From Haliotis rubra (Eukaryota): a stretch of 64,000 nt of DNA. Shown in pieces: positions 8,585 to 45,200 of the stretch. A program made the position numbers and the translations under genes. The notes below the pieces were generated by a model. The model saw nothing but the letters and a program-made list of their open reading frames with translations, did no database searches and was not told where the DNA came from. The number at the start of each line of letters is the position of its first letter. Within the stretch, counting starts at the first letter, position 1. Location: the NCBI RefSeq assembly GCF_003918875.1, contig NW_025767104.1, positions 372,001-436,000 on the forward strand, in the 5' to 3' direction.

Positions 8585-8850
8585 AGAGGACATTATTATT
8601 CAAGGGAGGGAAGTATGTGACAGGATGAAATGTTTGTATGTATTTAGTGTTTTTATTCTTTAGTTTTAACTGAATTAAATATTCAGTTTAGTGTATTTTA
8701 AACATTATATACTTCACTCTTCAGCTTCTCTTAACCCCTCTCTGAGCTTACTGCATGAGTTTTCTGCCTCAGTCACAGTCACCTAGAGCACAGCCACACA
8801 AAAGCACTTACTGTCCCTTTGCCATAAACCTTTTTAGCTTCCGGTTTCAG

Positions 8851-14800: not shown

Positions 14801-16814
14801 CCTATACAGAAGAAAGAAGTTGTATATCCATAAAAATAGTCCTCATCTTTCATCTACCCAACTTCTAGAATGCCAATCAATGAAGACGTACATAAAACGT
14901 CTAATGGTGACCACGATGGAAAAACATGGAGGTTTTCTGACCGTATGGTCCCTTTGACATTGATAAAATGATAGGAATACATGTTGATTTTATGATGATA
15001 ACTGCTTATTTAAAAAAACAGACTGAGTGCTTTTAATACAAAACCAAGTCTGTGCAAATATGGGCCTGATGTGTAGTGTGTCCCCCGCCGTGATATTGTT
15101 GGAATATTGCTATAGACCATAAAACCATACTCACTCACTCACTAATAACAGAACTGATGACAACATATTTGATCAAACATAATATATGATCAAACATTAG
15201 TTTTTCACACTTGCATGGTTTTCTTAAAATATATCATTTTTATATTTATCACCGTTATTTAGCCTTTAGGGCTCAACAGATTCGTACACTGGTTTGTTTG
15301 GAATGGTTTCTGGCATTGTGTACAAGATACCAATCAGACAATCACACTTGCTGAATTCTAAAATGGGTTCTGCCATAATAATAAATTATGATACTGAGTT
15401 TATTTTTATAGCGCTAAATACTCCAGGCACTAAGTGTCTGCTCCAAGCATCGAACGCCGTAATCGATGGTATACATTCACGTCAAAAGTATTGCACCCTG
15501 ATATCGTTAGATAATCAGAAAAGAAAAAGGTAATGATAAGACTGAAGTTGCATTGGCGGATGCAAGGTATGGGGGGGGGAGGTAGTTCAGGGTTTTTTTC
15601 ACAACAATCTATATGTGTCCACAAAATGTTCAATCATCATCCACAGCGCCAGGGTGGGAAATAAATCCCTTCATATCACAATGACAGTTTAGTTTGCTTT
15701 ACATTCATGATTATTTCACTGTACGGATATTGAATTTGGAACAGAACGCGCAGCGGTTAATGTAGGTTGCGTGGTGAGTGAGTTTGGATTAATGCCGCTT
15801 TTAGCAATATTCCAGCAATATCACGGCGGGGGACACCAGAAACGGGCTTCACACAATGTACCCATGTGGGGACAAGAACCCGAACTTTTGGCGTGACGAG
15901 CGGAGGCTTTAACCAATAGGCTATCCCACCACCCCAGTTCGGCGTGGTTCAATCTCCAGGTATCTTATCGCTACACTGAAAACGCAGTGTGTTTATCTCC
16001 ATTCTAACGTGCGGCTGCCTCGTTGGTAATGACGAAGACACTGAGTATTTAGTAGAATGTGGATGTGAACAATGGAACACAGATAACTGTCTTCTGTACT
16101 GATATCCATAGAGATTTTAGCAGATATTTATGCGTGTGGAAATGTTCTGGACGCTTCTTGTTTACAGTGAGTGAGTGAGTGAGTGAGTACGGTTTTATGC
16201 CACTTTTAGCATTATTCAAGCAATATCACGAGGGGACGCCAGAAATGGGCTTCACACACTACCCATGTAGGGAATCGAAACCGGGTCTTCAGCTTGACGA
16301 GCGGACGCTTTAATCATTAGGCTACCCCCACCGCCCCTCTTTTTAACAAAGTATGTGACCTAAACTTTGTCTATATCATAATACCTTCCTCGTCTATATC
16401 ACACACGTTGGTAGTGTGAAGCGCAGAGACAGTGACTTCGACAATGGCAGTGTACCTGTTTATACATTCCGATGATGATGCCTTTAAATCTGCTGTTTCA
16501 GTCAGAGGAGGTTGCTGTCACACCTATGACTAGAATCAAAATTGAGTTATGCCCTAATTCATGACGGAATAATGAATACATATCTCCTGCCTGGGTGATA
16601 AACCTTGAAATGTCAGCTAAATGTCACACTATAACGATACACTTTGTAGGTTAATACAGCGTCACCTCTACATACCGCCTCACTAGTAAGCCGTATCGTG
16701 GGCTAGAAGGGCACAAGGGTGAATAACACATGAGGACAATGGGTTGATAAACTGTAACAGTAATAGCATACGATCACTTACAGTGTACACCCCCCTGCTT
16801 GATGACTTATCCAT
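11806..16814 (-). CDS. Cytosolic-type sulfotransferase A (Sulfotransfer_1 family), ~314 aa, 6 coding exons
   Basis: Exons 16814-16782 (MDKSSSRGVYT), 14479-14281, 13913-13593, 13041-12938, 12657-12495 and 11930-11806. All GT-AG with consistent phases. Motifs GYPRTGNHW (5'-PSB), PRVLNCHF (catalytic His), RDPKDVAVS (3'-PB) and WKGVSGEWRNWF. Confidence 0.92.
15775..15935 (-). mobile_element. tRNA-derived SINE, family 1 (tRNA-Asp-like head, (ACTC)n tail); representative minus-strand copy
   Basis: Family consensus has A box TAGCCTAGTGG, B box GGTTCGATTCC, cgtcacg loop region and ggaatattgctaaaagcggcgtaaaac + (actc)n tail. Other minus copies at about 13337, 16168, 16997, 24567, 27435, 28990, 36755, 54700 and 60063. 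Confidence 0.9.
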
Positions 16815-19438: not shown

Positions 19439-21041
19439 TAAGTTAGCCATGCTGTCCGACGTGATTCATCGAGGTATTTTAGCACTGGTGAGGCAACACT
19501 TGTAGTCGATGAAGTAATCAACACCAATATACGTATACTGCAATGGTAATAGTATCGCCGACATTCACCAGGAGCCATATTGTTATTTACATTTTTACCA
19601 GAATAAATATAAAAATCAATATGTAATTCAAGAATATCTCATTCCTCAGCAGTTTGTAAGAGACAACAAGAATGTGTTAAGTAATCTCAGCATTGTGAAT
19701 GTCAGACATGTCATGATGCATATATACTACCCATCAAAAGTTTAGACTCATTAGTGTAAATGTAGTCACTTACTTTAGTCAACTGTTCTAAACTTGATTT
19801 TGCAAAATAGTCCATTCAGTTTAAAGGTACTGTTTACACATGAACTAATGTATTGTAAAACAAATTCGTCACGTTGAAAAGATTATTGTCATGAGTTCAG
19901 TAAACGATGTAAATCAGTGAAAATTGGCGAATTCTTAACAAAACTTTACATCAAAACGCAGCTGTTCACATGAACGATATTTGCACATGCTTTTTAGCAA
20001 TTTGATGCATGATCCTCGTACAATTCGTCTGCATAAGGTTTGCTGTTGGTTCCCCAAGTTAGTGGAGACATTCATCTTCGATGTAACCACATATATATAC
20101 ATAACATATAGTGAGTGTTTTAGGTGAGTCTAAACTTTTGATGGGTAGTATATGATAATAAATACTTTCAGTGAGAAGCATTGCCCTCTTTAGAGCTCGC
20201 ACACAATAGACCCTAAAACCTCGTGCAGCAATATCGCGAGTCGCATATGTCATTGGCGTGGTGTCCTTAGCTAATTTACCACCTGCATGGCATGGGCACC
20301 AAGCTCGGAAACTCACGTGCACCCTTCAAGTGACACATCTACTTATCATCATGACATCCTTTCCATAAAAACAATATTTCTGAGTGCACTCTTTTGCATA
20401 ACGGGCGGTATTTCAATGTTGAATTTCTCGTATTTCTCAGTTTTGCACAGGCCGCCATGTTGTTAGTTTGGCCAACGTAAAATTGAAACGCACATACTAA
20501 TTGGTCCGTTAGACTGAGATTGAGTAGAGTAGCAAATGAATTGACAAATGACCAAGGAGGGATAAATTGAGATCGCGAGAACTATAGGAATGAATCTTGG
20601 GGTTGTGAATGTTTACCGAGATGCGAGCCCTGGAGAGCCTGAGGATGTCAGATGGCGTCAGAAAAACATTATTACGTCACGAAGTCAGTACTTACAGACC
20701 AGATGACGTGCATGAGTACTTATCATTACTCGTTATCCAATTCAACTATCTGACTGGCGTTTTCCCATCAGGCAATATCCCATGCACGTTATCATGACGT
20801 AATAGTGTTTCATATGACGTCATCTGCTTCTCACGTCACGACCTGTTCACATTTTATTTACACAGAACCACAAACAAATGTCATATTGTTGTATAGATAT
20901 ATTTCAGTAAATATTAATCGCTAAAATGATAAATTCATTGTCCCTGTCGGTGTGTACATGAGCAGACGAAAAGGTAGGTTTGTTAATAACTGATGAGTAT
21001 ATAAATATAACAAATATAAGCCCATGAGCGGTGCACTTTTT

Positions 21042-24000
21042 TCAACTGTCATTTGCTCTGCTGTATCGCTCATAGAATCTGGACCCCACCATCTTCTCCT
21101 CATACACACGGTAGTACTCATCCAGCATGTCCTTCGTGAACCACTTCCTCCACTCGCCAGAAACACCTGAAATGATAAAAGTTCTACGCTAAACGGGACG
21201 ACTGAGTTGGGCTCAACGCCTGATTGATCACCATACTACACCAAATCCAGAAATTACTACCACAAGTACGATGCTGACCGTGTTTGAACGTCGATTATTG
21301 TTTGAGGGAGCATATACGATAATCACTTTTGATAAACCAATCATTAATTACGTTGTGGATACTTATGAACGAATATTTAAGTGTAATATCACAGAAGAAT
21401 AGGTATCGATGTAACGATATTCCTCTGAGGAAACGCAGCATTCCTCCTTTCAGGATTTACTTTAGGTGATTAAAACGTTGGCTCGTCACGATGAAGACCC
21501 AGTTTCGATCCCCAACATGGGCACATTTGTGTGAAGCCCATTTCTGGTGTTCCCCGCCGTGATATTGCTGGAATATTGCTAAACACTAAACTCACTCACT
21601 ACGGAGGGTACTATGAACAATTTTGGTGTTCACATACGTGAAATATATATTTAAAAAATGTGTATGTCAAAATTCAGAGTTATCAAGGTTCGTTACTGAT
21701 AATACCAATCACTAGATAGTCTAATCTGATCCAGACTGGATTATGTAATGGCCACTGTAAAACAAGAAACCAACAGAGATATGAAATATACTATTTAAAA
21801 AATAGAAACGCATAACCCACAAATTTGTTGCGAAAATGTTGTATTTTCAAACATGTATAACTCGTCCACAACTAAACTTTAGTACATGAATTTTTACATC
21901 AGTTTAGAAGAAGGAAATGTCTATACAACCAAGTGGATAACATTAGACAAAGGATACGTTGAGCGCGATGGTGATGACGTAGCACGGTCCCGACGTCGTG
22001 TCTCCTGGCTCTCAGTCCAATTTTTCTCAACCTGTTCCGTACAGTTTGACCGGATATTCTCCGAAGTCCAGGCACACTGGCTGCTTGGCTCTCACCCGTG
22101 GCAGTACGATCACACAATCGTAGTACCGGATGTACCGATCTTGTCCAGCAGTGGTGACTCGATATCTGCCTGTACGGGGACGGTCATTTGTTATACCTGT
22201 TTGGTTGTAACGATCTGCAAGCCGTGACATCATGCTCAGACTAACATTCAGAATCCCCTTGCAACAAAAGATTGGTAATCTCCAGAGTGCATTCTTGCAT
22301 AGGCAATGTTCCGTGTCGCAGTGTCAAGATGTGGCGTAGTGATTTGACCTTGAAACTCCTTCAAAACGAATGCCGATTTCCGAAAGTAATCTGGATTTTT
22401 ATAGCATGCTCTTTCCTGCACAATTTCAACCGGAAGCTGATTCTTGTTGCGTTGTGGCGATGCCTGTTTAATCCTTGTAAGAAATCTCATCAAAATCAAC
22501 ATTTTCAGGTAAAATCGATTTTCTACTTGTGCAATTGTGTAAAATCATGTTATCAACACTTTCGTTGCATATTTTGACGATTGTTTGAACACAGTAGGTA
22601 ATTAATATATTTTTAAAAACAAAATGCCTATGCGTTTCGTTTTTGGGATAGTATATATTGTACCTTTCCAGAAAAATAGACTATCCCCGTCAACTTTCAC
22701 AGCATAGGCATCTTTGTCCACCTTCATCTTCGTTATGTGACACTTTTCTGCAATGGACTTGCACAGATCGTCATTTCTAGGGAGTCCTAAAAAGTCCGAC
22801 AATTTCTGTACAGCCGCAACTGGGTCCTGTAACATATATATGTATGTGAGTTAGAGTAGAATGGACCAGCATGGATGGGTGGGAGCCATTTCAAGATCAA
22901 CACAATTACAACTCGTACAAGTCCATGTCTCCAAAACAACATTATCAAACCAGCATAGGCTCGTAAATCTCAAGTCTGGACTATAGTATGAGAGAAACTA
23001 AATTGCCACTTGAAAAGAGTATTTTCTTTCAGATACCCCAAAGCATGCCCCGCGACGGGATTTTACACTCTGCATCTGGACTATTGCTCGTTTGTGAAAG
23101 TTCGTGTGACTCTGTACTGCTTTCCCATTTCCCACAAGGATCGGTTCTGCGACCAGTGTTGTTTACGCTTTACACCAGAGATCTAGGAGATGTAATCAGT
23201 ACACATGATGTGAGTCACCATGTTTATGCTGATGACACCCAGTTGTCTGATTCGTGCAATCCCAGTACAGCAGATCGAATTTGGGAACGACTGTCAGAGT
23301 GTACAAGTGACGTAAAAACATGGATGACGACACATTTGCTCAAACTGAATGAGACGAAAACAGAGGCGTTGCTTGTCGGCACTAAGAAGAATCTTCATCA
23401 AGTGATGACTAACTCAGTCACAGTTTGCAACACTGTCATTCCATTTTCGAAAACTGGACTCTGATCTCTCTTTGAAAGCTCATATTGACACAGTCTGCAA
23501 ATCCTGTTACTTCCATTTGCGGAACATTAGCAGCATCCGAAGCTCCCTTACTACAGCGGCAGCTCATGCACTGGTGCGATCTCTGGTTCTCTCAAAGATT
23601 GACTACTGTAATAGCATCCTCTATGGACTTTCCGAAAAACTTCTATCAAAACTCAAGAAAGTACAAAACTCTGCAGCTCGACTTGTCAGCAAAGTTCCCT
23701 CTAGGATCCACATAACGCCTGTTCTTAAGTCTCTTCACTGGCTACCAATCAGAGCCAGAATTGAATTCAAGGTCCTGAATCTTGCCTACCAGTGTTACCA
23801 TCTTACGGCTCCAGACTACCTTGTTGAGCTAGTCACCAATCACAATCCTTCCAGAATGTTAAGATCGGCAGATAGACACCTTCTCACCATTCCCAGACAG
23901 AAACTCTGGGCATTCGGGTTTCGCTCCTTCAGCTATGGTGCTCCACAGTTGTGGAATCAACTCCCGACTGAACTCAAAATGTCTCCCTCCATTTACTCAT

Positions 24001-27000
24001 TTAAAAGTTCCCTGAAAACCCATCTTTTCAGAAAATATTACAATCTATAACTGAACTTTCCAAATATTTCACCCTCGTTCTAGCATAACCTTTGCTTTGT
24101 AAATATTTGTAAATATGTAGCGCTTGCCTGATGTGTGGAATTCAGCGCATTATAAATACACATATTATTTATAATTATGTATTTCGGAACCAGCTGGATG
24201 TCATTGATCTTATATTAGCTAGTGTTTACTTGTACAAACATTGCCATGTTTACTCGCCACCCCTGAAGACCCTGGTTATAATCTTCAGTGGCCCATGCTT
24301 GTCTTAAGAGGCGACTAACGGGACGTATGTCATGGTATCCATTTGCGACGATCGATGCTCATGCTGTTCATCACTAGATTGTCTTGTCCAGACTCGATTA
24401 TTAACATATGTAGCTGGATTATTGCTGAGAGAGGCGTTTCAGAATAAACAGAAAACAAACATGCTCAAGCGTCAGTTTGTCTCTTTACAAGCTAACGATT
24501 CTGTATCAGCCAGTAAGATAATTTTAATGTCAATATGGGTAAGTTCTCAATTTGAAGACTGACTGACTGAGTTTGGTTTACGCCGCTTTTAGCAATATTC
24601 CAGCCATATCACGGCGGGGGACACCAGAAATGAGCTTCACTCATTGTACCCATGTGGGGATTCGAACCCGGATCTTCGGCGTGACGAGCCAACGCTTTAA
24701 CCATTAGACTACCCCACCGCCCCCTCAATTTGAAGAAAGATCCAGTGAATCCGCGACGTGTATGACAGATACCTTTATTGTGTCTTCGTATACTTGGAAA
24801 TGGACTGGTACATCAGGATTTTCACTGAAATACGCTTCTGCGTCTCTGAGGTGGTCAAACATACCGTTGTTTATCACTGAAAGTAAACACAATGGGCAGC
24901 ATGAGTTTAAAGGAAAGAGGCCAGTCCGTGAATGAAATATGGTGTAAATGCAAATTTGTACATTATGAATGAGTTGAAAATTACTTCGACTTCAAGACTA
25001 TATCAACCAAATTCACCTAGCCCTAGCCTTTGTAATCTGACTTTGTACGGTTTTTTGCGTCTCTGAGGTGATCAACGATACCGTTGTGTATCACTGAAAG
25101 TGAACAAAATGAGATTAAAGGGTAGAGGAAAGGAAACATAGTGTAAATACAAATTTGTACATTTTGAATGAGATGAAAATTACTGAGACCACACGGATAA
25201 ACCAAATACTATCACCTAGCCCATATAGTGACTTTGTATTCTGAATTCATAATGTGATAGACAGACAATCCAATATGTTACATATTTGTTGGGTCACAAA
25301 CATGTATTTAACCGAACCCTCGCACATTTTATAATCATGGAGAAGGGAGTTATGACTGGTGTAATGATATAAAGTAGAATAATAAAATACGCTACCGTTT
25401 GTGCACTTTTGTACGTTTGTACTCTCATTAAAAGGGTTATCTCATTACATGGACATAGACATAACCATATTTAACAAACTGAGACACACTTAACACATTT
25501 AACAAATATTTAAGAACAATGCTTTATGTCACGCCCTTCAAGGATGATTTAACGTAGCCTTCGGTGTCCTTATTCTGTAGTATATGTGGACATGTATGAC
25601 TGACAACCACCTGTGCTGTCGTCACAAACATAATGGTCTGTTTCAGCAATAGACTGAGTATGTTGCAAAAGCAATGAAATATCAAGACATCAGCAATGGC
25701 ATAGAACAGGTCAAGGCCTCAAGAAGGTCAATGCAGTGAAACGTCGTTTACCCGGACAGTCTCGAAATACACAATGCCATTTTAGAAAGTGATCAAATGT
25801 AACATATGTTATATTTGGGATTACACTTTCTCTAGCACTTTTTGAGTTGAGTCCCATCCGGGATTCGAACCCACACCCTCAGAGTCAGGCACCTGAAACA
25901 ATTCGGGAAACCTAAGGTACAAGTCAAAATAGGGAATTGCATCACACACCATATTTTGTCTCTGATGCATCAAATTTCGAAATGTATTCCACATCTAATG
26001 CCTCTTTCGCAGTGAACAATTTTCAGAAAAACAATGTTGTTGTACTGCATGATACTGGTATTTTTCTTCAAGGTAATGATTACCTCTTTGTTCAAGGAAC
26101 AGCTGCAGGAAGTCCTCAAACGTTCCAAGGTACAGAGTGTTCAGATGGTGTCGATCGTAGTGAATCTTGTACAGAGAAACTGCTACATCTTTAGGATCCC
26201 TCACTGTAAAGATGACCCGACACTTCTTTTCCTTCAGATCAAGCGGTGCTTGAGACATGAAGAAGTGGCAGTTCAGAACGCGAGGCGATGGCAGTTTGAA
26301 CACTTCTTCATCAGGTATCAGTTCTAGATGGTCCTTAAACCTTGGGATAGTTTCTGCTTTGCCTTGCAGCAGCATGTTAGTCATCTCCCACGTCCAGTGA
26401 TTGCCTGGAGATGGCAGCATGTACATTTCAGAGGCGACTACCATTTGATATCCTCATCAATAGACTAATTGGTAAAACTAAAGGTTTTGTTTTACCTGTA
26501 TCAATGTCAGTATCTCTTCGGCAAATCGACACACATTTTTTGTTACTAGGCGACTATCACTTTGTCACTTTACTTTCTGAACAGAAGAAAATATTAATAA
26601 GGTGCATCTTTCATACCTTTTCACCACAACTATAATTGCAAGTTTCGTGACAATATCAATAAGAAAGATAATATCTCAAAGCTCGGGACTGTTAACGTAA
26701 AGTCCATTCTGTACTTTCACGAAGCTGGAACATTATTCTTTTTGTATATACTCTAACCTGTCCTGAGATAGCCAGGGAGATAGATATCGTCCGGTCTAAG
26801 CTGTAAGGTTCGGATTCCCTTCAAGCAGCTAAGAGGAAAGTAGTTGCTGGTTCGCAGTCCTTCAAACATCTGAAACATGACTGACTGTCCCTGGCGGTCC
26901 TTCTCATGGACGATCGTCTGACCAGAGAGATCCGGCACCAAGACTTTGCCTTCCATCTAAACATACAATGACTATGGTTCATTTAATGGCCTTATAACAA

Positions 27001-27972
27001 TTTTATGAACAGGATTGCTTGGGGTTTCTTCATAAAATTGTATATGACACAAATGACAGAGACAATTTCTTGTATAAGTTTTCATTGATATGACAAAATT
27101 ATATATGTACTTGTCTGTGTCAATTTTATGAACAGAATTGCTTGGTTTTTTTCATAAAACTGACACAGACAAGTACGTATATAATTTTGTCATATCAATG
27201 AAAAATTATACAAGAAATTGTCTCTGTCATTTGTGTCATATATACCCCTTGAGTGCAAAATAGCATTATTGTGTCAGAGATATATTACTACAGCAGCAAA
27301 TCAACATCCAATGGATGGCAGTAAAACAAGAAGCTAAATATCACTTAGTGTCCATTGCACAAACTTCACCAAGAGTAATATTTCAACATATTGAACGGTT
27401 TTCAGAGAGACAGAATAAAGGCAATAATGACAGAGTGAGTATGGTTTTACGACACTTTTAGCAATATTCCATCAATATCACGGCGGGAGACACCAGAAAT
27501 GTGTTTCACACATTGTACCAATGTGGGGATTCGAACCCGGGTCTTCGGCGTGAAGAGCGAACGTTATAACCATTAGGCTACCCCAACGCCCTGTATAAAG
27601 GCATTATGATTTGATCAGGTGGACATGAGTCGATTCGGCGAAGTCTACCAAAAACATGATTTCTGTTGTAGAAGATTTTTTATTTCCCAGAGATAAATAC
27701 AAGATGAATGCCGTTGCTAAGGAACGCCGCGAGTGCCTTTACGAGGTACAAATAGTCTCACTGGCCTAACCACCACTTTGGCTGAATTAGGCCATCTGCT
27801 GCAAGAGGCGTACCCACTCCCTCGTCACTGCATTTAAGGGTCTGATTTGGGCCCAGCCCCGACTTAAAAATGTTTCTGACGTTCTATCGTTTTGATGTTA
27901 TGGTATGCACGTTTATGAAGTTATGTTACATAACTTACCGTGTATACACCCGTTGTTTGTTTCCCCGTCCAT
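21042..27972 (-). CDS. Cytosolic-type sulfotransferase B; exon 1 frameshifted, intact 303-aa ORF from the ATG at 26956
   Basis: Exons 27972-27939 (34 nt), 26956-26758, 26404-26084, 24876-24773, 22826-22664 and 21166-21042, all GT-AG. Motifs [24 protein letters not shown] and [14 protein letters not shown]. Confidence 0.88.
21789..22653 (-). mobile_element. Internally deleted Tc1-like transposon in the last intron of SULT B
   Basis: Termini TACTAT..GAAACGCATA / TATGCGTTTC..ATAGTA with TA duplication. Empty site atgaaacatattgtacc in paralog C (~31900). HTH fragments DRPRTGR and [16 protein letters not shown]. Confidence 0.9.
23131..24179 (+). mobile_element. 5'-truncated L2/CR1-group LINE in an intron of SULT B
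   Basis: PQGSVL.P.LF..Y, YADDTQL, LKLNE.KTE and [13 protein letters not shown] motifs. (tat)n tail. Absent from the paralogous intron of C. Confidence 0.9.
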
Positions 27973-28142
27973 CGTGTTGTGTGCTTGATAAACACTGTTA
28001 TACCAGGGCAGTGACCGCGTGACCGATGGTCAGGCGATACCCTCTACACAGCGCTGTCTCGTTATAAGGATGCGTGTTGGGAACTCTTGGGCCTGAATGG
28101 TCATTACGTTTAGATGTGTAGCTGCTATTTAAGTTACAACAA

Positions 28143-28143
28143 A

Positions 28144-28186
<43 letters not shown>

Positions 28187-28230
28187 GCACACACACGAGA
28201 GAGAGAGGGGGGGAGAAAGAAAGAGAGGTA
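28143..28230. repeat. (GCAC)n/(AC)n/(GA)n compound microsatellite upstream of SULT B
   Basis: Visible tandem repeats. Confidence 0.95.
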
Positions 28231-29433
28231 AAGGTAGGTATAATAACTGCAAAAAACATGTCTATTCATAATGTTTCTGTAGAGTACTGTATGATTAGTA
28301 TGCTGGCGGAATAAGTGTGCGTGTGTAAAGTACACCAGCATAACACATCCCGTACATACATGTCCCCTTTTTTGCATTGTTATGAAGCGGGCCCATGTTG
28401 ACACCGGGTATGAACTAGTCCAGGGTCTGATAAGACTGCCTTGAGATGTGATCAAACGGATCGAGTGCAATAGGGGTAACGGGCATATATGAATAATGAT
28501 AGCCACACTTAATGGTGCAGTTTACCATACAGATTTTACATGTAAGTTCGCAAATACGCTGCAAGACAGATATCTGGTCGATAAGTAACAGAGTACTGTT
28601 TGAACCCACAGGCTACAGTATTTCCATGTTAACCAAAGTGAGGGCTGAAAGGAGTATTGTTTTACCCCGCCTTTAGCAATATCCCAGCAATATCACGACG
28701 GGGGAAACCAGACATGCGCTTCAGAAACTGTGCCCATTTTGGGAACCGAACCCGGGTCTTCAGTGAGACGAGCGGAAAACCTTACAGATCTAAACGTATC
28801 AATAACCCAATACTTGTTGCAGAAAGTCATTGATCTTGCCATGATTGAATTGTTTTACACTTTGTACATATACAAGAAGCCGAAGAAATTTTCGCAAGCT
28901 TCCCCGTTTTTCAGTCAAAAATATTTGTTAGCGGTAACTTTTCAGAAAGAGTTATCGCATATATAACATATTTGACCACTTTCTGTCAGTCAGTGAAGGT
29001 TTACCCCGCTTTTAACAATATTATAGCAATATCATGGCGGCAGACACCAGAAATGGGCTTCACACATTCTACCTCTGTGGGGAATCGAACCCAGCTCTTT
29101 AGCGTGACGAGCAGACGCTTTAACCATTAGGCTACCCCACCGCCACAACAGTCAGTTAGACTGCCTAGAGTAACCAATCAAATTGACAAATGATCAAGAA
29201 CGAATGAATTGAGATCGCGAGAACCACGGGAATGGGGTTGTGAAGGTTTACCCAGATGCGAGCCCTGGAAAGCCTTGGGATATCAGTCTGAGTTCACAAG
29301 CTACAAATACATTTCCTGTGACATCATTACCGCCATCGGACTCGCAATATGGCAAAACCTGCGAGACATGCAATTGACGTCAGAACAAACATTACTATGT
29401 CACGAAGTCACTACTTACAGACCAGCTGACATG

Positions 29434-30148
29434 CATTATAAGTTGTATGCTTCTTTTGAGGGTAATGCGGTCTGATGTACGCTTCTTTGTAGTAGGGTTA
29501 CCCGAGCCGGTAGGCGAAGGATGACACTGCTACAAAGTGAGTGAGTGAGTTTAGTTTTACGCCGCACTCAGCAATATTCCCGCTATATGGCGGCGGTCTG
29601 CTACAAAGAGGCGTACATCAGACCGTATTACCCTCGAAAGAAGCATACAACGTATTTATCTTACCACCATGTTGAATGTACAAAATATCCTTTTATTTTA
29701 GTTTAAAGATCGCTATCGACTACAATGTATATGACATATAAACAAAATGGCGTCAGCCTCTCGACTGAATTTTTTATATCAGTGAAGCATATTCTGACAA
29801 GCTTAACACTGCTATAAAAATGGTTCATTATGTTTAAGTTGAGTGTGCAAACGACTAAATGTATTAAACAGTTTAAATAAAGCAGTAAAAGTCGGTAAAA
29901 TAAATCTGCACAGAGTGAACTCAAAAACAGCTAATCGAACGGTTTTCGAACTCCGGACACTGCATGCGTCATATTATGACGTCATACGATTGTTAACGAA
30001 ACAGCTTCTCGGCGGAGAGTTTGGCGGGTACCGTGGCAGCGGGTAATATTTTTTCCAGTCGTCACCCTTCTGAGAGGGGTGACACGGAAACTTGTTAAAG
30101 CGTCATTGACCAATGACATTAAAGTATTTCACATGAGGGTAAGATAAG
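29434..30148. mobile_element. Non-autonomous hairpin-ended element (Crypton-like by structure)
   Basis: Absent from the paralogous sequence at ~20712 (gcat|gagtacttatc). Long left-end hairpin 29441-29651. Internal ttatcttacc is complementary to the terminal ggtaagataa. Confidence 0.6.
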
Positions 30149-30925
30149 AGTACTTATCATTACTCGATATCCAGTTCAGCTATCTGACTTGCATTTTCCC
30201 ATCATGTAAAATCCAATGCACGTCGACCCGCCATCGTGACGAAATAGTGTTCATATGCAGCATCTGCTTCTTACGTAATGACCTATTGTCAGTTATTTTT
30301 ACACAGAACCACAAACAAATGTCATATTGTTAAAAAAATATATTTCAGCAAAAAGAAATGGCTAAAATGATAAATCCATTGCCCTGTCTCTTCGTGTACA
30401 TGATCGTGTACGTGTAAGTTTGTTAATAACTGGTGAGTAAATAAATATATAATACGGATTCTGAGTAGTGAGTGAGTGAGTATGTTCTTACGCCGTTTTT
30501 AACACTATTCCAGCAATATTACGTAGGAGGATACATAATCTTTTGATTATATTGTTAGTACCATTATGTTTAAGGTACTCTTGTATGTATGAATACTCTT
30601 TTGGTTATGTAGAGGGTTTTCCGAGTTATACATTGTTAATACCCATACGTTTAAGGGAACGATTTGATCACTTTATGTGTAAATATCCTTGCGATAATGG
30701 AAAGATTTTCGCATTATTTATTGTTAACACCATTATGTTTAAGGAAAGGGTTTCCTTCATTATGTCGAAGGCTTTTGCGTGATTTATTGCAAAAACATTT
30801 ATGTTTAAGAAAAGGGGTTTTGTATTTGTAAATACTCTTCTCGATGTATTTTATGCATTAAATTTATTGAAAGTGTCTTTTCGCTTATGTTTAACCATTT
30901 GTACGCCCATGGCTGGAGCACATTT

Positions 30926-33900
30926 TCAACTGTCATTTGCTCTGCTGTATCGCTCATAGAATCTGGAGCCCGCCATCTTCTCCTCATACACACGGTAGTA
31001 CTCATCCAGCATGTCCTTCGTGAACCAGTTCCTCCACTCGCCAGAAACACCTGGAATGATAAAGGTACTACCCTAAATGGGGTGACTGATTTGGGCCCAG
31101 AGCCTGTTTGGTATCAGCACGCTACACAAACACCAGAAATTACCAGATTTTGTATATTATCAGAAGGTGTGGCGGTGAATGGAACACAAGTTTGAATGGT
31201 GTACTATTGTTCGCGGGAGCAAACCCTTAAGAGACGCAGGTCATATACGATGATCACATTTGATTTTTGTTTTAACCAATCATTTATTACATTAACGTAA
31301 TGTAACTTATGAAAGAATATTTAAGTGTTATATTACAGATGAATACGCATTGATGTTACAATATTCCTCTGATGAAACGCAATATACATCCTTTCATGAT
31401 TTATTTGGGGTAGCCTAATGGTTAAAGCTTTTGTTCGCCACGCCGAGTAAATAGTTAACTGTATTTTCGAAGAATACATATCGATGCCATGGTTTTGTAG
31501 CGATATTGCTCTGGTGAAACGCAATATACCTCCTTTCAGGATTTACGTTAGGTGTCATAATGGTTAAAGCGTTGGCTCGTCACGACGAAGAACAAGTTTC
31601 GATTCCCAACATGGGTACAATGTGTGAAGCCAATTTCTGGAATATTGCTAAACACTAAACTCACTCACGTTTGGGGTTACTATGACAATTTATTTCAGAA
31701 ACGTATATGTCTCCAAAGTTCAGAATTATCAAAAAATGCCAGACATGTATGGTGGTCATAAGTTTCGAATCGTAGGTCGAATGGCTAGATATCCTTCCGG
31801 TCAGGTTCCTTACTGATGATACCAATTACTCTGGATAGTCAAATCTGATCCAGACTGCTTTATGTACTGGCCACCGTAAAACAAGAATTCAACAGAGATA
31901 TGAAACATATTGTACCTTTCCAGAAAAATAGACTATCCCCGTCAACTTTCACAGCATAGGCATCTTTGTCCACCTTCATCTTGGACATGTGACACTTTTC
32001 TGCAATGGACTTGCACAGATCGTCATTTCTAGGGAGTCCTAAAAAGTCCGACAATTTCTGTACAGCCGCAACTGGGTCCTGTAACATATATATGTATGTG
32101 TGTTAGAGTAGAATGGACCAAGAGGGATGGGTGGGAGCCATTTCAAGATCAACACAAATACAACTCGTACAAGTCCATGTCTAAACGACAACATTATCTA
32201 CAATATAACAGAAACTAAATTGCCAGTTGTAAAGAGTGTTTTCTTTCATATTTCTCCAAAGCATACCCGTGAAGGGATATTACAGTGTGAATCTGGACTA
32301 TTGCTCGTTTGTGAGAGTTTGTGTGGCTCTTCACTGCTTCCGCCTTTTCGGAAACATCAACGTGTCATTGATTTTATATCAGCTAGTGTGGACCATTGTT
32401 TGTGTGTTTGTTTGTTTGTTGTTGATAGCTGCATACATTAATATTCCACCTATAATATGGCGTCATTCTGTAATTAATCGAGTACAGAGCAGACAGTCCT
32501 TTGATAAAAAGTATGTTAACATTTGTCAAACAAGGCAGCGAGCCTGACCACCCGATCCTGTTAGTCGCCTCTTACGACCAGCACTTCTAACCTGGATCTG
32601 CACGAGTGGTAAATGTTGACAAGCTGATGTAGCTTGACCACTCAGTCATGCTTACACGTCAGTGTGAATCAGCTGATGAATCTGTATCAGTCGGTTACAA
32701 CTGTTTAATGTCAGCATTGGTAAGAGTTCAATTTAAAGAAAATTCCAGTGCTGGATCCGTGACGTAAATGACAGATACCTTTAACGTGTCTTCATACACC
32801 TGGAAATGGACTGGTACATCAGGATTGTCACTAAAATACGCTTCTGCGTCTCTGAGGTGATCAAACATACCGTTGTTCATCACTGGAAGTAAACACGATG
32901 GGCAGCATGAGTTTAAAGGGAAGAGGTCTGTCCGTGAGTGAAATATGGTGTAAATGCAAATTTGAACATTATGAATGAGTTGACAATTACTTAGACTTTA
33001 AGACTATATCAACTAAATTCACCTAGCCCCAGCCTTTGTAATCTGACTTTCTACTAAAATGCATAGATTGTGCATGGTCAGAAACAAGTATTTTTACAAA
33101 AAGGGAACACGTACCATTAGTTCTAAAATCACGGAGAAGGGAATTAATATGAGGAGTGTAATGATCCGAACTAGAATAATAAACGAAAATGCCATCCGTT
33201 TATTTTATTTTCTCATCAACAGGGTTATCTACATAGACATAATCATATTTAACAAAGCGAGACACACTTAACACATTTAACAAACATTTAATAGCAATAC
33301 TTAATGGTAAATGTCACTCCAGTCAAGGGTGTTTTAACGTAGCCAACGTTGCTCTTATTCTGGAGATTATGTGTGCATGAATGACAACCAACTGTCCATT
33401 ATGACAATAGTGAGTAAGTGAGTTTGGATTTACAAAACTTTTAGCAACATTCGAGCAATATCACGAAGGGGAATACCTGAACTGAAATAACAACTTCCAG
33501 AAAGACAATGTAGTCGTACTGTATGATACTGATATATTTCTTCAAGGTAATGGTTACCTCTTTGTTCAAGGAACAGCTGCAGGAAGTCCTCAAACGTTCC
33601 AAGGTACACAGTGTTCAGATGGTGTCGATCGTAGTGAATCTTGTACAGAGAAACTGCTACATCTTTAGGATCCCTCACTGTAAAGATGACCCGACACTTC
33701 TTTTCCTTCAGATCAAGCGGTGCTTGAGACATGAAGAAGTGGCAGGTCAGAACGCGAGGCGATGGCAGTTTGATCACTTCTTCTTCAGGTATCAGTCCTA
33801 GATGGTCCTTAAACCTTGGGATAGTTTCTGCTTTGCCTTGCAGCAGCATGTTAGTCATCTCCCACGTCCAGTGATTGCCTGGAGATGGCAGCATGTACAT

Positions 33901-35980
33901 TTCAGTGGCGACGTCTATTCGATATTATCATAAACAGACTAAATAGTAAAACTAAAGGTTTTGCTTTGCCTGTATCAATCTCAGCTTCTATTCGGCATAT
34001 CGACAGAATTATTTTGTTATCACTATGCAAATTTCACTTTGTCGCTTTACTTTCTGAACAGAAGAAAATATCATTAATAAGTTTCATCGTTCATACTTTT
34101 TCACCACAACTATATTTGCAAGTTCGAGTTTCGAAACAATGTCAATATAAAGATAATATCTTGAACCTCGGGGCTGTTAACGTTAAGTCCACTCTATACT
34201 TTCACGAAGTTCGAATATTGTTCTCTTTGTATATACTCTAACCTGTCCTGAGATAGCCAGGGAGATAGATATCGTCCGGTCTAAGCTGTAAGGTTCGGAT
34301 TCCCTTCAAGCAGCTAAGAGGAAAGTAGTTGCTCAATCGCAGTCCTTCAAACATCTGGTACATGACTGACCGTCCCTGGCGGTCCTTCTCATGGACGATC
34401 GTCTGACCAGAGAGATCCGGCACCAAGACTTTGCCTTCCATCTAAACATACAATGACTATGGTTCATTTAATGTTCATAGAAGTTGACACAGACAAATAC
34501 ATATATAATTTTGTCATATCGATGAAAACTTATACAAGAAATTGTCTCTGTCATTTGTGTCATATATACCCCTTGAGTACAAAAGAGCATTATTGTGTCA
34601 GACATATGTACCTACAGCAGTAAATGGACATCAAATGGATGGCAGAAAAATAAGAAGCTAAATATCACTTAGTGTTCACTGCACAAACTTCAACAAAAGA
34701 GAGAGAGAGAGGGGGAGAGAGAATTTAGTCCAGTATAAAGGCAGTAGACCCAAAATATACTACAAACAAAAAGAATTGGAACACCTTAAAATTTGATAGT
34801 CATATGTAAACCTAAACGTGGTGGGGTTATATATACTCCAAGATAAATGCAATTGTGTGTGTGCTTAATGGGCACTATAAACGACATGTTGGAACATGCA
34901 GTGGAGCAATTGGTTCAGTATTCGTTGAGTTTGAGTGAAATGAAACATTATCAGCGAAAAGCAAGGGTGCTGAAAAACACCAGCACCATGTTTGATTCAA
35001 ACGCCCAAACACAACAGCCTAGTCCACGTGGAAGACTGTAGCTTCCCTTGCAGCTTGTGGCAACTGGTCACTGGCAGAACTTTCGCAGAATCGGTTCTGA
35101 GGGGCTTGGAGCACAACACATCGGTCATCTGCCCTTGATGTTTTTCTGGGTCTTCCAGAGCGAGGTCTGTCCTGTCCTGTACCAGTGGCCTGGAACCTGT
35201 CCATTCAATCTGTGAATGACAGAGGGACGGCGAGCAACACTTCTTATGGATTCACCATCATGTAACCATGCAGTGGCCCTGCTTCTGCCTTGGGCGCTTA
35301 ACGGTCTGCGCTGTGGCATGGTGAAGAAGTTGTGAGGCTTCAATATTGTCTGTAGCTTCTTTTAAAGGAAACATTGCCATAAGCTGCAAGGGGAGTCTGT
35401 CTTCCACATGCACTAGGCTGTTGTGTTGGGGCGTTTGAATCAAACATGGTGCTGTCGTGTATCAGCACCCTTGTTTTTCGCTGTTTTTGACAATGTTTCA
35501 TTTCACTCAAACTCAACGAATATTGAATCAGTTGCTTCACTGCATGTTCCAACATGTCGTTTATAGTGCCCATTAAGCACACACACAATTGCATTTATCT
35601 TAGAGTATAAATAACCCCACCACGTTTAGGTTTATATATGACTTTCAAAATTTAGGTTGTTCCCATAATCTTTGTTTGTAGTATACATTCATCGCAATAT
35701 TGCATTGAGGGCAATGTATATGCCTATTAATTAGAATATGCATGTACATGACTGTATAGTCACAGTGATGAATGAATGCCTTTGCTAAGGAACGCTGCAA
35801 ATGACTTCATGAGATCCATGACACAGCCAGCACTTTGGCCGAATTAGGCCATCTGCTGCAAGGGGTGTACCCGCTCCCTCGTCACCACTTTTAATGATTT
35901 TGACATTCTGTGATGTTTATGTTATGAAGTTATGTTGCATAACTTACCGTGTATACACCCGTTGTTTGTTTCCCGTCCAT
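30926..35980 (-). CDS. Cytosolic-type sulfotransferase C, ~314 aa, 6 coding exons
   Basis: Exons 35980-35948 ([11 protein letters not shown]), 34441-34243, 33878-33558, 32882-32779, 32078-31916 and 31050-30926. All GT-AG and open throughout. Motifs [24 protein letters not shown] and FFWKGVSGEWRNWF. Confidence 0.93.
34758..35683 (-). mobile_element. Tc1-like element with long (~290 bp) inverted repeats in intron 1 of SULT C
   Basis: Termini tactacaaacaaa / tttgtttgtagta flanked by TA. Mirrored pseudo-ORFs (MQLCVCLMG...) on both strands. Central transposase N-terminal fragment DRPRSGRPRKTS..DDR. Confidence 0.9.
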
Positions 35981-42200: not shown

Positions 42201-45200
42201 TTATGTGTATAATTGTTCTCTGTGCCCTTGGTACCACCAGATCTCTTGACGCAGATCAGTGCCCTGTTTCACAAAGCGATCGTAGCGCTAAGGTGATCGT
42301 AGCTCCCACACTTTAACATAGACTTACGACAGTCGTAGCGCTACGCTCGCTTTGTGAAAGGGCCCCAGGAGAGTACCCGGCTTTTCCACCCTTCCCGGGA
42401 GCCCATTCCCTCTGACACTCTGGGTTATGCAGAAGGCTGCAGTGTTGGGGAGTCTACATATTGTCCACAAAATATTTGGTGGATTCGACTAGGCAGCGCA
42501 TCCTGAGGGATGTCTTGGCACGGCAACTTGAGATGATGATAAGCTCTACCAGTCTGACTGTGCCAGGACCACCCGACCTGTCTTTGCTGCATGTTTATCT
42601 TAGTTTGTGACAATAACAATAATTATGTTTAATCACACTGATTATTACTATAACCCCTATACCGAGATGCATATATCTGGGGGTTGTCAAAGAGTATGAG
42701 CATGAATATATTTTGGACGGCGTTCAACATCATTATCTACTGGGGAATTCACATGAAAAACAGCTACCATAAAATATGTTTTCAACCGTGCCTCCTCTAG
42801 CAGGTGGGAATCCACTATTTATACAATGTCATTCTAATTTAAGGCTTAACTAATTTATGATTTCTTTGAAAAATGATAACAAGTAGTAAACCTGTTTGCA
42901 AGTGTGCATATTTTTCTTTACTTTCATGTTCATTTAACGTATAATTATAATACATACTTTTATATACTTAGAGCAACTGTGGGTAAACAAATTACAACGC
43001 ACATCACACAAAACCTCGGCACATGCAGATGTGTCTCTGTTATCATAATATTGTAAAATGTTGAGTGAATGATGAAGATTCCATATTTAAATCTCATTTA
43101 ATCACTCAAATATTAGATTAAGGAAACACTTTATTGATACAAGATGCAGGAACAACAAAAAACATTACTAATTTTAAAATGTATGTTTATTTCAGATCGG
43201 AGATGAGGACTGTGATATGGATGAGGATGAAATGGACATTGTGTATATATCCGACAAGGGAGGTAACTCCAAGAAGATGCAAGTGTTCGAGGGCACCTAC
43301 TATGCTCCAATGTATAAACCGGGAGTATTGAAACAAATCAAGACAGTCAAACTGAGACCAGAAGACGTCTTCTTCCCATCATTTCCCAGAACTGGTGAGT
43401 ACATGCGAGAGTGTGCATCCGGGTTAGAATTGGTCTTCAGCAACGATGCTTGTCGTAACAGGTGACTAACGGGATCGGGTGGTTAGACTCGCTGACTTGG
43501 TTGACACATGTCATCGTATCGCAGTTGCATAGATCGATGTGCATGATGTGAATCACTGGATTGTCCGGTCCTGACTCGATGATTTACAAACCACTTTTAT
43601 AACGAACAAAACAAAAACGTCTATGATGTTGGGACAAGATATAAGGCTTGTGTCGAAATTAGTCATACAGTTTGTGTGTATATTGCCAAATAAAAAAAGG
43701 CGAAAAAACCTTTCCACGTCCATAAGAAAGCAGAATCCATCGGACAATGCCTTTATCGTGAACTTGTTTATGAATCACTATTAAATAGTGAGCATTTAGT
43801 GAGCATATAGTGAGCATGGTTGAGTCCCATTTCGCCCACATCCCATTTCGGCTGGTAGGATCCTAATCCGACAATCCAGTGATTAAAGTTCTGAGGAATG
43901 TTCCACGCCGTCGGGTCACGATGACATGTCACCGAGGCTGGCCACCCAATCAGTGTTATTGTTTCATCCGTGAGAGTAACCATCAAGGAAGGAAACATTT
44001 ACATCATTCGTGCACAAGGAACAGATATTTCACAAGGACGAGCCCAATTCCCCCCTCCCCGTTATGGCTGGAATATTGCTAAAAGGGACGGAAAAACTAA
44101 ACACACCCACAAATTCGAGAGACCGTAATTTGTCATAGAAGACTTGCTAAGTTATTGAAATCCAAACTGGAACAAGTGTATCCTTCTCATCTCATTTGAC
44201 TCATGATGATTTCACATTGTTTTGTTTACAACGATTCTTGACAGCATTAAACACATTTAATAGTGATTCGTCGACGTTGACTGATAGAATTCATTCTGTA
44301 CTTTAGGCCCTGCTCCATAATGCAAACTACAGAGCGTACAATGAAGTAGTAGTACGCGGTTGGAGTAACATATACCTCATTTTACAGGCAGAGCTGGTTT
44401 GCTTAGCACTTCGCACCCCTCGTGGAATCTTCAGAACCGTTCTCTATATGAAGTCTTCGTCCGACGGCCATATTTAACAGCACCTCTGAAGTTGTAACAC
44501 CGAAACTTGTTTAATATTTTCCCTTGTTGAGGTAGAAGGGTAATTATGTGTCCACACTGTGTAAATATTAAAACTGAGAACAATAACTGAATTCAGAAAA
44601 CGCTGAGGGAGTGATGCCATTGCTGATAGAAGCAGTCATAAAATCTTGAAGATTGGCGTGAATGATGACATTCAGAAAACGCTGAGGGAGTGATGCCATT
44701 GTTGATAGAAGCAGTCATAACATCTTGAAGATTGGCGTGAATGATGACATGCTGAGTTTGAGTGAGTGGGTAAATGTTGCTTTAGTGAGTGAGTTTTGTT
44801 TTACGCCACTTTTAGCAATATTCTTGCAATATCACGGTTGGCGATACAGAAATGGGGAAATGTTGCTTTAAGCCACATCACCAATATTGAGGCTATTCAC
44901 GGATAGAAAATATATTTGTTCCCATAGAAACAAACATAGAATAAAAGTGATGACGAAGAGCACTAAATCTTCAGTCCATTATCACAAGAAATAGTAGAAA
45001 CTGACATTCAGAATTTAAAATTTACATGTTATCATATAGTTTAGTTGCCTTCAATTATACTAAAATTATAAACGGTGTTGAAAAGTTCAGCAATTGTTTG
45101 AACAGTGTAAAACCTTCGGCGAATAAGCGAAACATCCACACATTCCAACAAAAAGTGCTTGAGAGTCACAGGGACTGTGACCACAGGCCCTCGTGTCTTT

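What the first reader, a model, noticed from the sequence alone, without database searches (positions are those of the whole stretch)
22664..34441. SULT B versus C: exons 2, 3 and 5 differ only in amino-acid-changing codons
Seen, by manual comparison. Exon 2 has 6 nt differences confined to 3 codons (Q/R, F/Y, T/L). Exon 3 has 5 differences, all nonsynonymous (E/G, D/E, F/I, L/V, and N/T two residues before the catalytic His). Exon 5 has 3 differences in 2 codons (IT/MS). I saw no standalone synonymous change in these 683 nt. In contrast, exon 4 (104 nt) has about 6 synonymous changes and the flanking introns are clearly diverged. Inference: exon-limited gene conversion combined with diversifying selection on substrate-contacting residues.
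Basis: partly seen in the sequence, partly recalled or inferred. Interest (0 to 1): 0.75.

Follow-up and report, generated by a model that had tools for sequence, protein, structure and literature searches.

The report
Exon-confined gene conversion in abalone sulfotransferases
Two neighbouring abalone sulfotransferase genes keep most of their coding exons almost identical by copying sequence from one to the other while their introns drift apart; this is a clean example of a known process, and the few remaining amino-acid differences are not shown to be kept by selection.

Summary
SULT genes B and C lie on the minus strand of a Haliotis genome. In exons 2, 3 and 5 (683 nt) they differ at 14 nt in 10 codons, and every one of those codons changes an amino acid. 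Exon 4 (104 nt) has 6 synonymous and 3 non-synonymous differences.

The lack of silent change is real. dS is 0.017 in exons 2+3+5, against 0.40 in exon 4 and 14.5% divergence in intron 2. About 21.5 synonymous differences were expected and 2.5 were seen (p about 1e-6). The same exons show dS 0.26-0.29 against H. asinina, so the silent sites are not constrained.

Coding-exon-confined interlocus gene conversion is well supported:
- Paralogue A shows it in exons 5-6, with a breakpoint inside exon 5.
- H. asinina shows it independently in exon 6.
- Short-read contigs from another data set suggest B alleles that already carry C's exon 2 and Val157.

Diversifying selection is not shown:
- omega is 1.3, not above 1. 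It is above the family background of 0.15.
- The 14 differences are clustered, pointing to multinucleotide events.
- Two B states match paralogue A.
- Several differences do not look fixed.

This is a new example of a known kind. The scan flagged a similar pattern in a tubulin array of this genome.

The parts
26758..26956 (-). SULT B exon 2 (holds Met1 of the 303-codon model; Met12 of the 314-aa form)
   Evidence: AG/GT sites and frame. Six nt in 3 codons differ from C.
26084..26404 (-). SULT B exon 3 (PSB-loop end, catalytic His113, 3'-phosphate-binding Arg/Ser region)
   Evidence: Five single-base differences from C, all non-synonymous.
24773..24876 (-). SULT B exon 4, the shortest coding exon and the one not homogenised
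   Evidence: Six synonymous and 3 non-synonymous differences from C; dS 0.40.
22664..22826 (-). SULT B exon 5
   Evidence: Three nt in 2 adjacent codons (IT against MS).
21042..21166 (-). SULT B exon 6 with stop codon
   Evidence: K270N, V289A and one synonymous difference.
27939..27972 (-). SULT B exon 1 (11-codon first exon), with one extra G in a G run relative to C
   Evidence: Every X1 and X2 contig laid there lacks the extra G, so the frameshift is doubtful.
34243..34441 (-). SULT C exon 2
33558..33878 (-). SULT C exon 3
32779..32882 (-). SULT C exon 4
   Evidence: Seven of the 9 exon-4 differences are derived in C.
31916..32078 (-). SULT C exon 5
30926..31050 (-). SULT C exon 6 with stop codon
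35948..35980 (-). SULT C exon 1 ([11 protein letters not shown], followed by gtaagt)
   Evidence: It matches the N-terminus of the 314-aa Haliotis orthologues.
26405..26757 (-). B intron 2, which lies between two homogenised exons and is itself not homogenised (C intron 2 is 33879-34242)
   Evidence: 51 mismatches in 352 aligned nt plus indels between B and C.
11806..16814 (-). SULT A, an older paralogue. Exons: 16814-16782, 14479-14281, 13913-13593, 13041-12938, 12657-12495, 11930-11806.
   Evidence: Exons 5-6 have dS 0.20-0.33 against B/C, while exons 2-4 have 0.8 to more than 1.5.
43238..49516 (+). SULT D, a divergent paralogue about 50% identical, on the opposite strand
   Evidence: tblastn.

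Best explanation
B and C are old tandem duplicates of a cytosolic-type sulfotransferase gene in an abalone. Their non-coding DNA and exon 4 are 13-16% diverged or more, which is about as deep as the split from H. asinina. Short-tract interlocus gene conversion keeps overwriting coding exons 1, 2, 3, 5 and 6 of one copy with the other.

Conversion needs near-identical DNA at both ends of a tract. It therefore still works in coding exons, where purifying selection has kept similarity high. It has stopped in introns, in the 3' UTR and in the 104-bp exon 4, which have drifted past that threshold or carry indels and transposon insertions. That part is inferred from the known requirements of conversion, not shown here.

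The process is still running, and tracts appear to differ among individuals. The 10 differing codons left in exons 2, 3 and 5 are what has arisen, or escaped overwriting, since the last tracts passed:
- about six single-base changes;
- three multinucleotide changes;
- possibly two small imports from paralogue A.

They accumulated under much weaker constraint than the family norm (omega about 1 against 0.15). The data do not require selection for divergence.
For: Shown:
- Gene models are intact with GT-AG sites, and the product is a Sulfotransfer_1 protein (E = 3e-37).
- B-C dS is 0.017 in exons 2+3+5 (Sd 2.5 of 148.7 sites) against 0.40 in exon 4. dN is even across exons at 0.016-0.036.
- Intron 2 differs at 51 of 352 nt. 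Divergence rises within 5-35 nt of each exon edge and directly after the stop codon.
- The same exons have dS 0.26-0.29 against H. asinina. Intron and silent rates agree in the control pairs: Ru-Cr 4.0% against 0.035, and window-asinina 20.6% against 0.27.
- The heterogeneity tests give p = 2e-5 to 1e-6.
- Family-wide repeats of the phenomenon: A against B/C has dS 0.20-0.33 in exons 5-6 but 0.8 to more than 1.5 in exons 2-4. wA exon 5 is closer to wC (dS 0.20) than to its own orthologue AsA (0.57). AsA and As1 exon 6 have dS 0 although the two genes lie 230 kb apart.
- The signal switches inside exon 5 near nt 137. Trees group by paralogue type for exons 2+3 and by species for exon 5 nt 1-137 and exon 6.
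- In read set X1, exon stretches are single merged contigs at 1.6-2.5 times the depth of B-specific intron contigs. Exon 2 and codon 157 occur only in the C form there, although the window's B keeps the ancestral Q24 and T36.
- omega = 1 is not rejected; omega = 0.15 is rejected.
- The differences are clustered (p = 2e-5).

Known: coding-restricted concerted evolution, and its explanation by similarity-dependent conversion, are described in PMC3924837.
Against: - dN in the homogenised exons (0.022) is about what an unconverted pair of this age would have, while dS is 10-20 times too low. Pure conversion would erase both alike, so some protection of amino-acid differences cannot be excluded.
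- Exon 4 has omega 0.09, which shows long-term constraint on both genes. That fits poorly with a long period of relaxed constraint.
- Three multinucleotide events among 9-10 events is far more than usual mutation spectra give.
- The read evidence comes from contigs only. A filter may have hidden the B-type contigs, and no RNA evidence for expression of either gene was found.
- In intron 2 the B-C split is not resolved from the split with H. asinina. In intron 3 C is the outlier. The age and history of the duplication are therefore uncertain.
Confidence: 0.65

Rival explanations
1. One reading: exon-limited conversion erases neutral differences, while diversifying selection holds amino-acid differences at substrate-determining positions. 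[quoted passage not shown]
For: - Non-synonymous divergence is retained at the level expected for the pair's age while silent divergence is erased.
- N:S is 11.5:2.5 in exons 2+3+5, against 3:6 in exon 4 and 23:36 between species (Fisher p = 0.002-0.08).
- Codons 94, 102 and 111 are present in both forms at about equal depth in an independent read set.
- The changes sit in segments that, by motif landmarks, flank the catalytic His, the nucleotide-binding region and the N-terminal strand.
- The model is established for opsins and other pairs (PMC3924837).
Against: - omega is not significantly above 1.
- No silent differences occur in codons next to the changed ones, although a protected island should keep them.
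- The differences are clustered as multinucleotide events, which are known to mimic positive selection (bioRxiv 10.1101/165969).
- Exon 2 and codon 157 differences are absent from X1. A related organism (X4) shows neither the B-specific states nor C's exon-2 states.
- C's G94 replaces a Glu that is invariant in 33 of 34 family members, and B's K270 replaces a near-invariant Asn. Both look more like relaxed constraint.
Confidence: 0.2
2. Assembly or polishing artefact: the two copies were partly collapsed, or short reads mapping to both copies overwrote real silent differences in the most similar stretches, which are the exons.
For: - B exon 1 carries an extra G in a homopolymer that no X1 or X2 contig supports, so the assembly has at least one doubtful base.
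- B's L157 and B's exon-2 haplotype are not seen in X1.
Against: - In the independent X1 contig graph the exon stretches are single unbranched contigs at 1.6-2.5 times the depth of B-specific intron contigs. The copies are therefore identical there in raw short-read data as well.
- B's exon 2 carries the ancestral Q24 and T36 states seen in three other species, not random errors.
- The same exon-confined pattern appears for A against B/C, and in the separate H. asinina assembly.
Confidence: 0.05
3. RNA- or cDNA-templated repair: spliced transcripts of one copy served as the template, which would explain why homogenised tracts stop at exon edges.
For: High-identity tracts end within 5-35 nt of exon boundaries at four exons.
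Against: - Exon 4, which lies between exons 3 and 5 in the mRNA, is not homogenised.
- The 3' UTR diverges directly after the stop codon, although it is part of the transcript.
- Identity runs 17-35 nt into the introns at several edges.
- No intron has been lost.
- The A to B/C tract ends inside exon 5.
Confidence: 0.04
4. No conversion at all: the duplication is recent and the introns are hypermutable, or silent sites of these exons are under strong constraint from codon usage, splicing enhancers or RNA structure.
For: The exons are short, and the sequence next to the splice sites is conserved.
Against: - The same silent sites have dS 0.26-0.29 against H. asinina and 0.34-0.37 against H. rufescens. 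That matches intron divergence in each control pair.
- Exon 4 within the same gene has dS 0.40.
- The per-exon trees are incongruent.
Confidence: 0.02

Closest known systems
Coding-region-restricted concerted evolution of duplicated genes (for example the yeast whole-genome-duplication pairs reviewed by Fawcett and Innan 2011, PMC3924837)
   Same: Paralogous coding sequence stays nearly identical through repeated interlocus conversion, while non-coding sequence has escaped and diverged. The explanation is the same: purifying selection keeps exons similar enough for conversion to continue.
   Different: Here the genes have five introns, so the homogenised region is broken into separate exon-sized patches. 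One internal exon (104 bp) has escaped. There are signs that tracts are still polymorphic.
[quoted passage not shown]
   Same: Tandem paralogues under conversion, where the surviving differences are amino-acid changes.
   Different: In those cases introns are homogenised and a peak of divergence, silent sites included, surrounds the selected residues. Here the introns are diverged, there is no silent halo around the changed codons, and several differences are not fixed.
Cytosolic sulfotransferases (Pfam PF00685; closest solved chain 5x2b, then SULT1 and SULT3-type entries)
   Same: Full-length Sulfotransfer_1 domain. His113 aligns with the catalytic His. The RDPKDVAVS and KGVSGEW motifs sit at the PAPS-binding positions.
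   Different: The PSB loop reads LRTGNHW instead of PKSGTTW. The residue two before the His is N or T rather than the Lys of the SULT1 'KTH' motif (from memory). The segment between the PSB helix and the His is shorter, as in 5x2b. There is an 11-codon first exon.

Membership tests
Cytosolic sulfotransferase (Sulfotransfer_1, PF00685) | Full-length match to the family profile above the curated threshold | tested here: met
   B protein: 129 bits against a cut-off of 22, residues 55-290 on profile positions 1-253 of 255. Named orthologues exist in Haliotis.
Cytosolic sulfotransferase (Sulfotransfer_1, PF00685) | Catalytic His and PAPS-binding motifs present | tested here: met
   His113 aligns with the His of 5x2b, and RDPKDVAVS and KGVSGEW align with the corresponding motifs. 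The PSB-loop Lys is Arg in all Haliotis members. Activity was not tested.
Concerted evolution by interlocus gene conversion | Divergence along the pair too uneven for one divergence time, at sites free of selection | tested here: met
   Silent differences: 2.5 of 149 sites in exons 2+3+5, 6 of 19 in exon 4, and 51 of 352 in intron 2. p = 2e-5 to 2e-6.
Concerted evolution by interlocus gene conversion | Paralogues within a species closer than orthologues between species in the converted segment only | tested here: met
   Exon 5 nt 1-137 and exon 6 group by species, while exons 2+3 group by paralogue type. For the B/C pair itself this test cannot separate conversion from a lineage-specific duplication.
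Concerted evolution by interlocus gene conversion | Conversion tracts segregating within the species | tested here: inconclusive
   X1 contigs show only C-type exon 2, codon 157 and the end of intron 4, at raised depth next to B-specific intron contigs. These are contigs only, filters apply, and it is one data set.
Concerted evolution by interlocus gene conversion | Significant fragments in GENECONV or an equivalent permutation test | not tested
   The program is not available here. Fisher and Poisson tests on silent sites were used in its place.
Positive or diversifying selection between paralogues | dN/dS significantly above 1 | tested here: not met
   omega = 1.29 in exons 2+3+5. P(at least 11-12 of 14 changes non-synonymous, given neutrality) = 0.38-0.63.
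Selection-maintained divergence island under conversion (Teshima-Innan) | Raised silent divergence linked to the selected sites, and differences fixed | tested here: not met
   No silent difference lies outside the changed codons in 683 nt. Exon 2 and codon 157 differences are missing in X1.
Selection-maintained divergence island under conversion (Teshima-Innan) | Differing residues contact the substrate | not testable with these tools
   No coordinates can be read from the structure tools. Only motif-based placement was possible.

The most novel reading that the evidence does not exclude
The amino-acid differences in the first half of exon 3 (E94G, D98E, F102I, N111T, next to the catalytic His) and at 239-240 are held apart by selection for different substrate ranges, while very short conversion tracts sweep every silent difference around them. 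This would be a duplicate pair caught in the act of neofunctionalising against ongoing conversion, with tracts short enough to leave no silent halo.
Probability: 0.15. Interest if true: 0.6.

Novelty: new member of a known kind. Interest (0 to 1): 0.35.

Why it matters
This is a clear, well-controlled case in a mollusc. Exon trees and intron trees of a tandem gene family tell different stories, and dN/dS between young-looking paralogues is misleading.

- Anyone dating duplications or scanning abalone detoxification gene families for positive selection from coding sequence alone would get the age wrong by roughly tenfold. They could also call selection where conversion and multinucleotide changes explain the counts.
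- If tracts really segregate among individuals, the locus could serve to measure the rate and tract length of interlocus conversion in a highly polymorphic marine invertebrate.

Tried and rejected
- Motif search for the vertebrate PSB and 3'PB motifs on both strands found nothing, because the motifs differ in this family. The genes were found from minus-strand frames and Pfam instead.
- A regular-expression and tblastn-short search for exon 1 failed. An ATG...GT scan found it in C and A, and an alignment found it in B.
- I looked for donors of the clustered changes in the window and the fetched loci. There is none for C's TTG(36) or B's ATAACG(239-240). Only paralogue A matches B's F28 and N111 context.
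- H. asinina As1 against its pseudogene copy served as a no-conversion control. Exon divergence there is 3.4-10%, against 9.5% in the intron. This is suggestive but not clean.
- I tried to decide whether the B/C duplication predates the split from H. asinina. Introns 2, 4 and 5 put B with C or leave the fork open. Intron 3 and the 3' UTR put B with the asinina copies and make C the outlier. This is unresolved.
- RNA evidence: the one presumed RNA run laid covered only transposon parts, not the exons.
- No paper on Haliotis sulfotransferase evolution turned up.
- Structure prediction was not run, because the tools return no coordinates from which contacts could be measured.
Full report
WHAT IS THERE

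The window is from an abalone. The best protein matches are Haliotis 'sulfotransferase 1B1-like' entries: 91% identity to H. asinina and 85% to H. rufescens and H. cracherodii. None is identical, so the species itself is not in the protein collection.

Self-comparison and tblastn show three sulfotransferase genes on the minus strand: A at about 11.8-16.8 kb, B at about 21.0-28.0 kb and C at about 30.9-36.0 kb. A fourth, divergent gene D lies on the plus strand at 43.2-49.5 kb.

B and C have five coding exons of 199, 321, 104, 163 and 125 nt. All have AG/GT borders, and each gene has an intact 303-codon frame. The product is a full-length Sulfotransfer_1 protein.

The orthologues are 314 aa because of an 11-codon first exon. 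I found that exon in C at 35980-35948, in A at 16814-16782 and in B at 27972-27939.

THE OBSERVATION

- Exon 2: Q24R, F28Y (TTT/TAC), T36L (ACC/TTG).
- Exon 3: E94G, D98E, F102I, N111T, L157V.
- Exon 5: I239M and T240S (ATA ACG against ATG TCC).
- There is no codon with a purely synonymous difference in these 683 nt.
- Exon 4: six synonymous and three non-synonymous differences.
- Exon 6: two non-synonymous and one synonymous.

Nei-Gojobori counts:

| Region | S sites | Sd | dS | Nd | dN | omega |
|---|---|---|---|---|---|---|
| Exons 2+3+5 | 148.7 | 2.5 | 0.017 | 11.5 | 0.022 | 1.29 |
| Exon 4 | 19.3 | 6 | 0.40 | 3 | 0.036 | 0.09 |

The 2.5 synonymous differences in exons 2+3+5 all come from paths through the multi-hit codons.

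IS THE LACK OF SILENT CHANGE REAL?

I fetched the orthologous loci of H. asinina (L001), H. rufescens (L002) and H. cracherodii (L003). I also fetched the H. asinina orthologue of A, which has a B/C-like pseudogene next to it (L004).

Intron 2 lies between the two homogenised exons 2 and 3. It differs between B and C at 51 of 352 aligned bases, plus indels.

Alignments of each exon with 200 nt of flank show that mismatches start 5-35 nt beyond every exon edge and directly after the stop codon.

Silent sites of these exons are not constrained. B or C against H. asinina gives dS 0.26-0.29 in the same exons, with intron 2 at 20.6%. H. rufescens against H. cracherodii gives dS 0.035, with the intron at 4.0%.

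At the intron-2 rate about 21.5 synonymous differences are expected in exons 2+3+5, and 2.5 are seen (Poisson p about 1e-6). Fisher tests against exon 4 and against intron 2 give p = 2e-5 to 6e-6.

The non-coding background is fairly even:
- intron 4: 0.16
- start of intron 5: 0.13
- exon 4 with flanks: 0.14-0.15
- downstream: 0.13-0.14

Intron 3 and the 3' UTR are more diverged. There B resembles the H. asinina copies more than it resembles C. In an intron-2 tree the B-C fork is not resolved from the split with H. asinina.

The pair is therefore old, roughly of the age of that species split. Its coding exons 2, 3, 5 and 6, and exon 1, have been made alike much later.

INDEPENDENT SIGNS OF CONVERSION IN THE FAMILY

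Paralogue A against B or C has dS of 1.4-1.6 in exon 2, 0.78 in exon 3 and more than 1.3 in exon 4. In exon 5 it is only 0.20-0.24, and in exon 6 0.26-0.33. The similarity ends within about 10 nt of those exons.

In exon 5, A of the window is closer to C of the window (dS 0.20) than to its own orthologue in H. asinina (0.57).

In H. asinina the A-type and B/C-type genes have an identical exon 6 apart from one base (dS 0), although they lie 230 kb apart. The H. asinina pseudogene keeps the B/C-type end of exon 6, so the functional copy there was overwritten from the A type.

Site by site, the first 137 nt of exon 5 hold four positions that group sequences by species and none that group them by paralogue type. 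The last 26 nt hold at least seven that group by type and none by species. This is a breakpoint inside the exon.

Trees agree. Exons 2+3 separate the A type from the B/C type with full support. Exon 5 nt 1-137 and exon 6 join the two H. asinina genes (support 84/85 and 82/86) and leave window A with B and C.

READS

Only contigs of public runs were available, and no run was on record as RNA.

In X1 (the same coded organism as the best holder), B-specific intron contigs fit with 0-2 differences at depth 142-158. Exon stretches are single contigs at depth 229-365, as expected if both copies share them.

- At codons 94, 102 and 111 both forms occur at about equal depth (184 of 386).
- At codon 157, across the three variable codons of exon 2, and at four intron-4 positions (22849-22872), every contig laid carries the C letters.

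The window's B has the ancestral Q24 and T36, and C has the derived R24 and L36. The simplest reading is therefore that some B alleles have already received C's exon 2. Filters and the contig format make this suggestive, not proven.

X4, which carries another organism label, shows Q24-Y28-T36 in exon 2 and C-like states in exon 3. It shows neither the B-specific states nor C's exon-2 states.

The extra G that would shift the frame of B's exon 1 is absent from every X1 and X2 contig laid there. It may be a homopolymer error, although contigs of C can also lie on that spot.

SELECTION

Polarising with three orthologues and the A type gives the following:
- Derived in B: F28, F102, N111, L157, I239, T240, K270, V289.
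- Derived in C: R24, L36, G94, plus M175, D192, L207 and four silent changes in exon 4.

Against neutrality nothing is significant. P(at least 11-12 of 14 changes non-synonymous) is 0.38-0.63. Ten of ten codons gives 0.085, and the six single-base changes give 0.23.

Against the family's usual constraint (omega 0.15) the excess is clear: p = 0.001 by binomial test, and Fisher p = 0.002-0.015 against the between-species counts.

The 14 differences are not independent. Fourteen random hits would fall in ten or fewer codons with p = 2e-5. Three events change 2-3 neighbouring bases at once. Such changes almost always alter the amino acid and are known to mimic positive selection (bioRxiv 10.1101/165969).

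B's TTT at codon 28 and AAC at codon 111 are the states of paralogue A, within 12-20 nt of identical context. They could be small imports from A.

C's G94 replaces a Glu present in 33 of 34 family members. B's K270 replaces a near-invariant Asn.

No silent difference sits next to any changed codon. A selection-protected island under conversion should have them (PMC3924837).

One thing speaks for some protection of amino-acid differences. dN in the homogenised exons is about what an unconverted pair of this age would have, and exon 4 shows long-term constraint (omega 0.09).

I give 0.65 to conversion plus weakly constrained recent change, three multinucleotide events and possible imports from A.

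RIVALS

- An assembly or polishing artefact is unlikely. The merged exon contigs appear in an independent short-read graph, B's exon 2 carries ancestral states, and the pattern recurs in another species' assembly.
- RNA-templated repair is unlikely. Exon 4 and the 3' UTR are not homogenised, identity runs a little way into introns, and one tract ends inside an exon.
- Constraint on silent sites is excluded by the between-species dS.

COMPARISON WITH WHAT IS KNOWN

Concerted evolution confined to coding sequence, with non-coding sequence long escaped, is described for yeast duplicate pairs. It is explained there by purifying selection keeping the similarity that conversion needs (PMC3924837).

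The opsin and RNase cases of selection against conversion show the opposite layout, with homogenised introns and diverged exons.

The present locus is a new and tidy example in a mollusc. Its added features are an exon-by-exon patchwork, an escaped 104-bp exon, and possibly segregating tracts.

The scan's notes list the same cluster (s1-329531). They also list an unverified 'exon-restricted gene conversion' in a tubulin array of this genome (s1-339727), which I did not test.

LIMITS

- There is no raw-read or long-read check, no RNA evidence, and no likelihood codon models or GENECONV.
- No atomic model was available to place the residues.
- The species was not identified beyond the genus.
- No sequence in this work was taken for human. 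The N runs at 52100-52316 and 52348-52538 were left untouched.

Noticed in passing
window 27939-27972 (minus strand): B's 11-codon first exon has GGGG where C has GGG, which would shift the frame from the exon-1 ATG. All X1 and X2 contigs laid there lack the extra G, so it may be a homopolymer assembly error.
   Followed up: partly
window 25053-25109 and 24836-25247: B's intron 3 holds a decayed partial copy of exon 4 with its upstream intron (translation ...[14 protein letters not shown]). It comes from a local tandem duplication of about 200 bp at 73% identity.
   Followed up: partly
window 8850-9155: Downstream of A there is a relic of a further sulfotransferase copy: the start of exon 5 ([21 protein letters not shown]) plus intron, 86% identical to A's 12601-12894.
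   Followed up: no
window 22967-24047 (plus strand): A reverse-transcriptase fragment (RVT_1, E = 6e-10; YADD motif) of a non-LTR element sits antisense in B's intron 4 and is absent from C. This accounts for much of the difference in intron length.
   Followed up: partly
window, e.g. 15775-15935, 24560-24722, 27433-27591, 36754-36911, 55798-55952: A SINE-like repeat of about 160 bp occurs in more than 15 copies at 72-88% identity, several of them inside the sulfotransferase introns. Read contigs pile up there at enormous depth.
   Followed up: no
L004:3073-5914 (H. asinina): Next to the H. asinina orthologue of A lies a B/C-like pseudogene. It has no exon 4, its exon 2 start is truncated, and it has 1-nt indels in exons 3 and 5. 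It occupies the position that B has in the window.
   Followed up: partly
window 9171-9635 and 19619-20083: A 465-bp segment is repeated at 96.6% identity downstream of A and downstream of B. Its origin was not examined.
   Followed up: no
window 30450-30900: C has about 450 bp of extra sequence starting a few tens of bases after its stop codon. From there on its 3' UTR is unalignable with B's, while B's 3' UTR matches that of the H. asinina pseudogene.
   Followed up: partly
window 52100-52316 and 52348-52538: Two runs of N (217 and 191 bases). They were left as they are.
   Followed up: no
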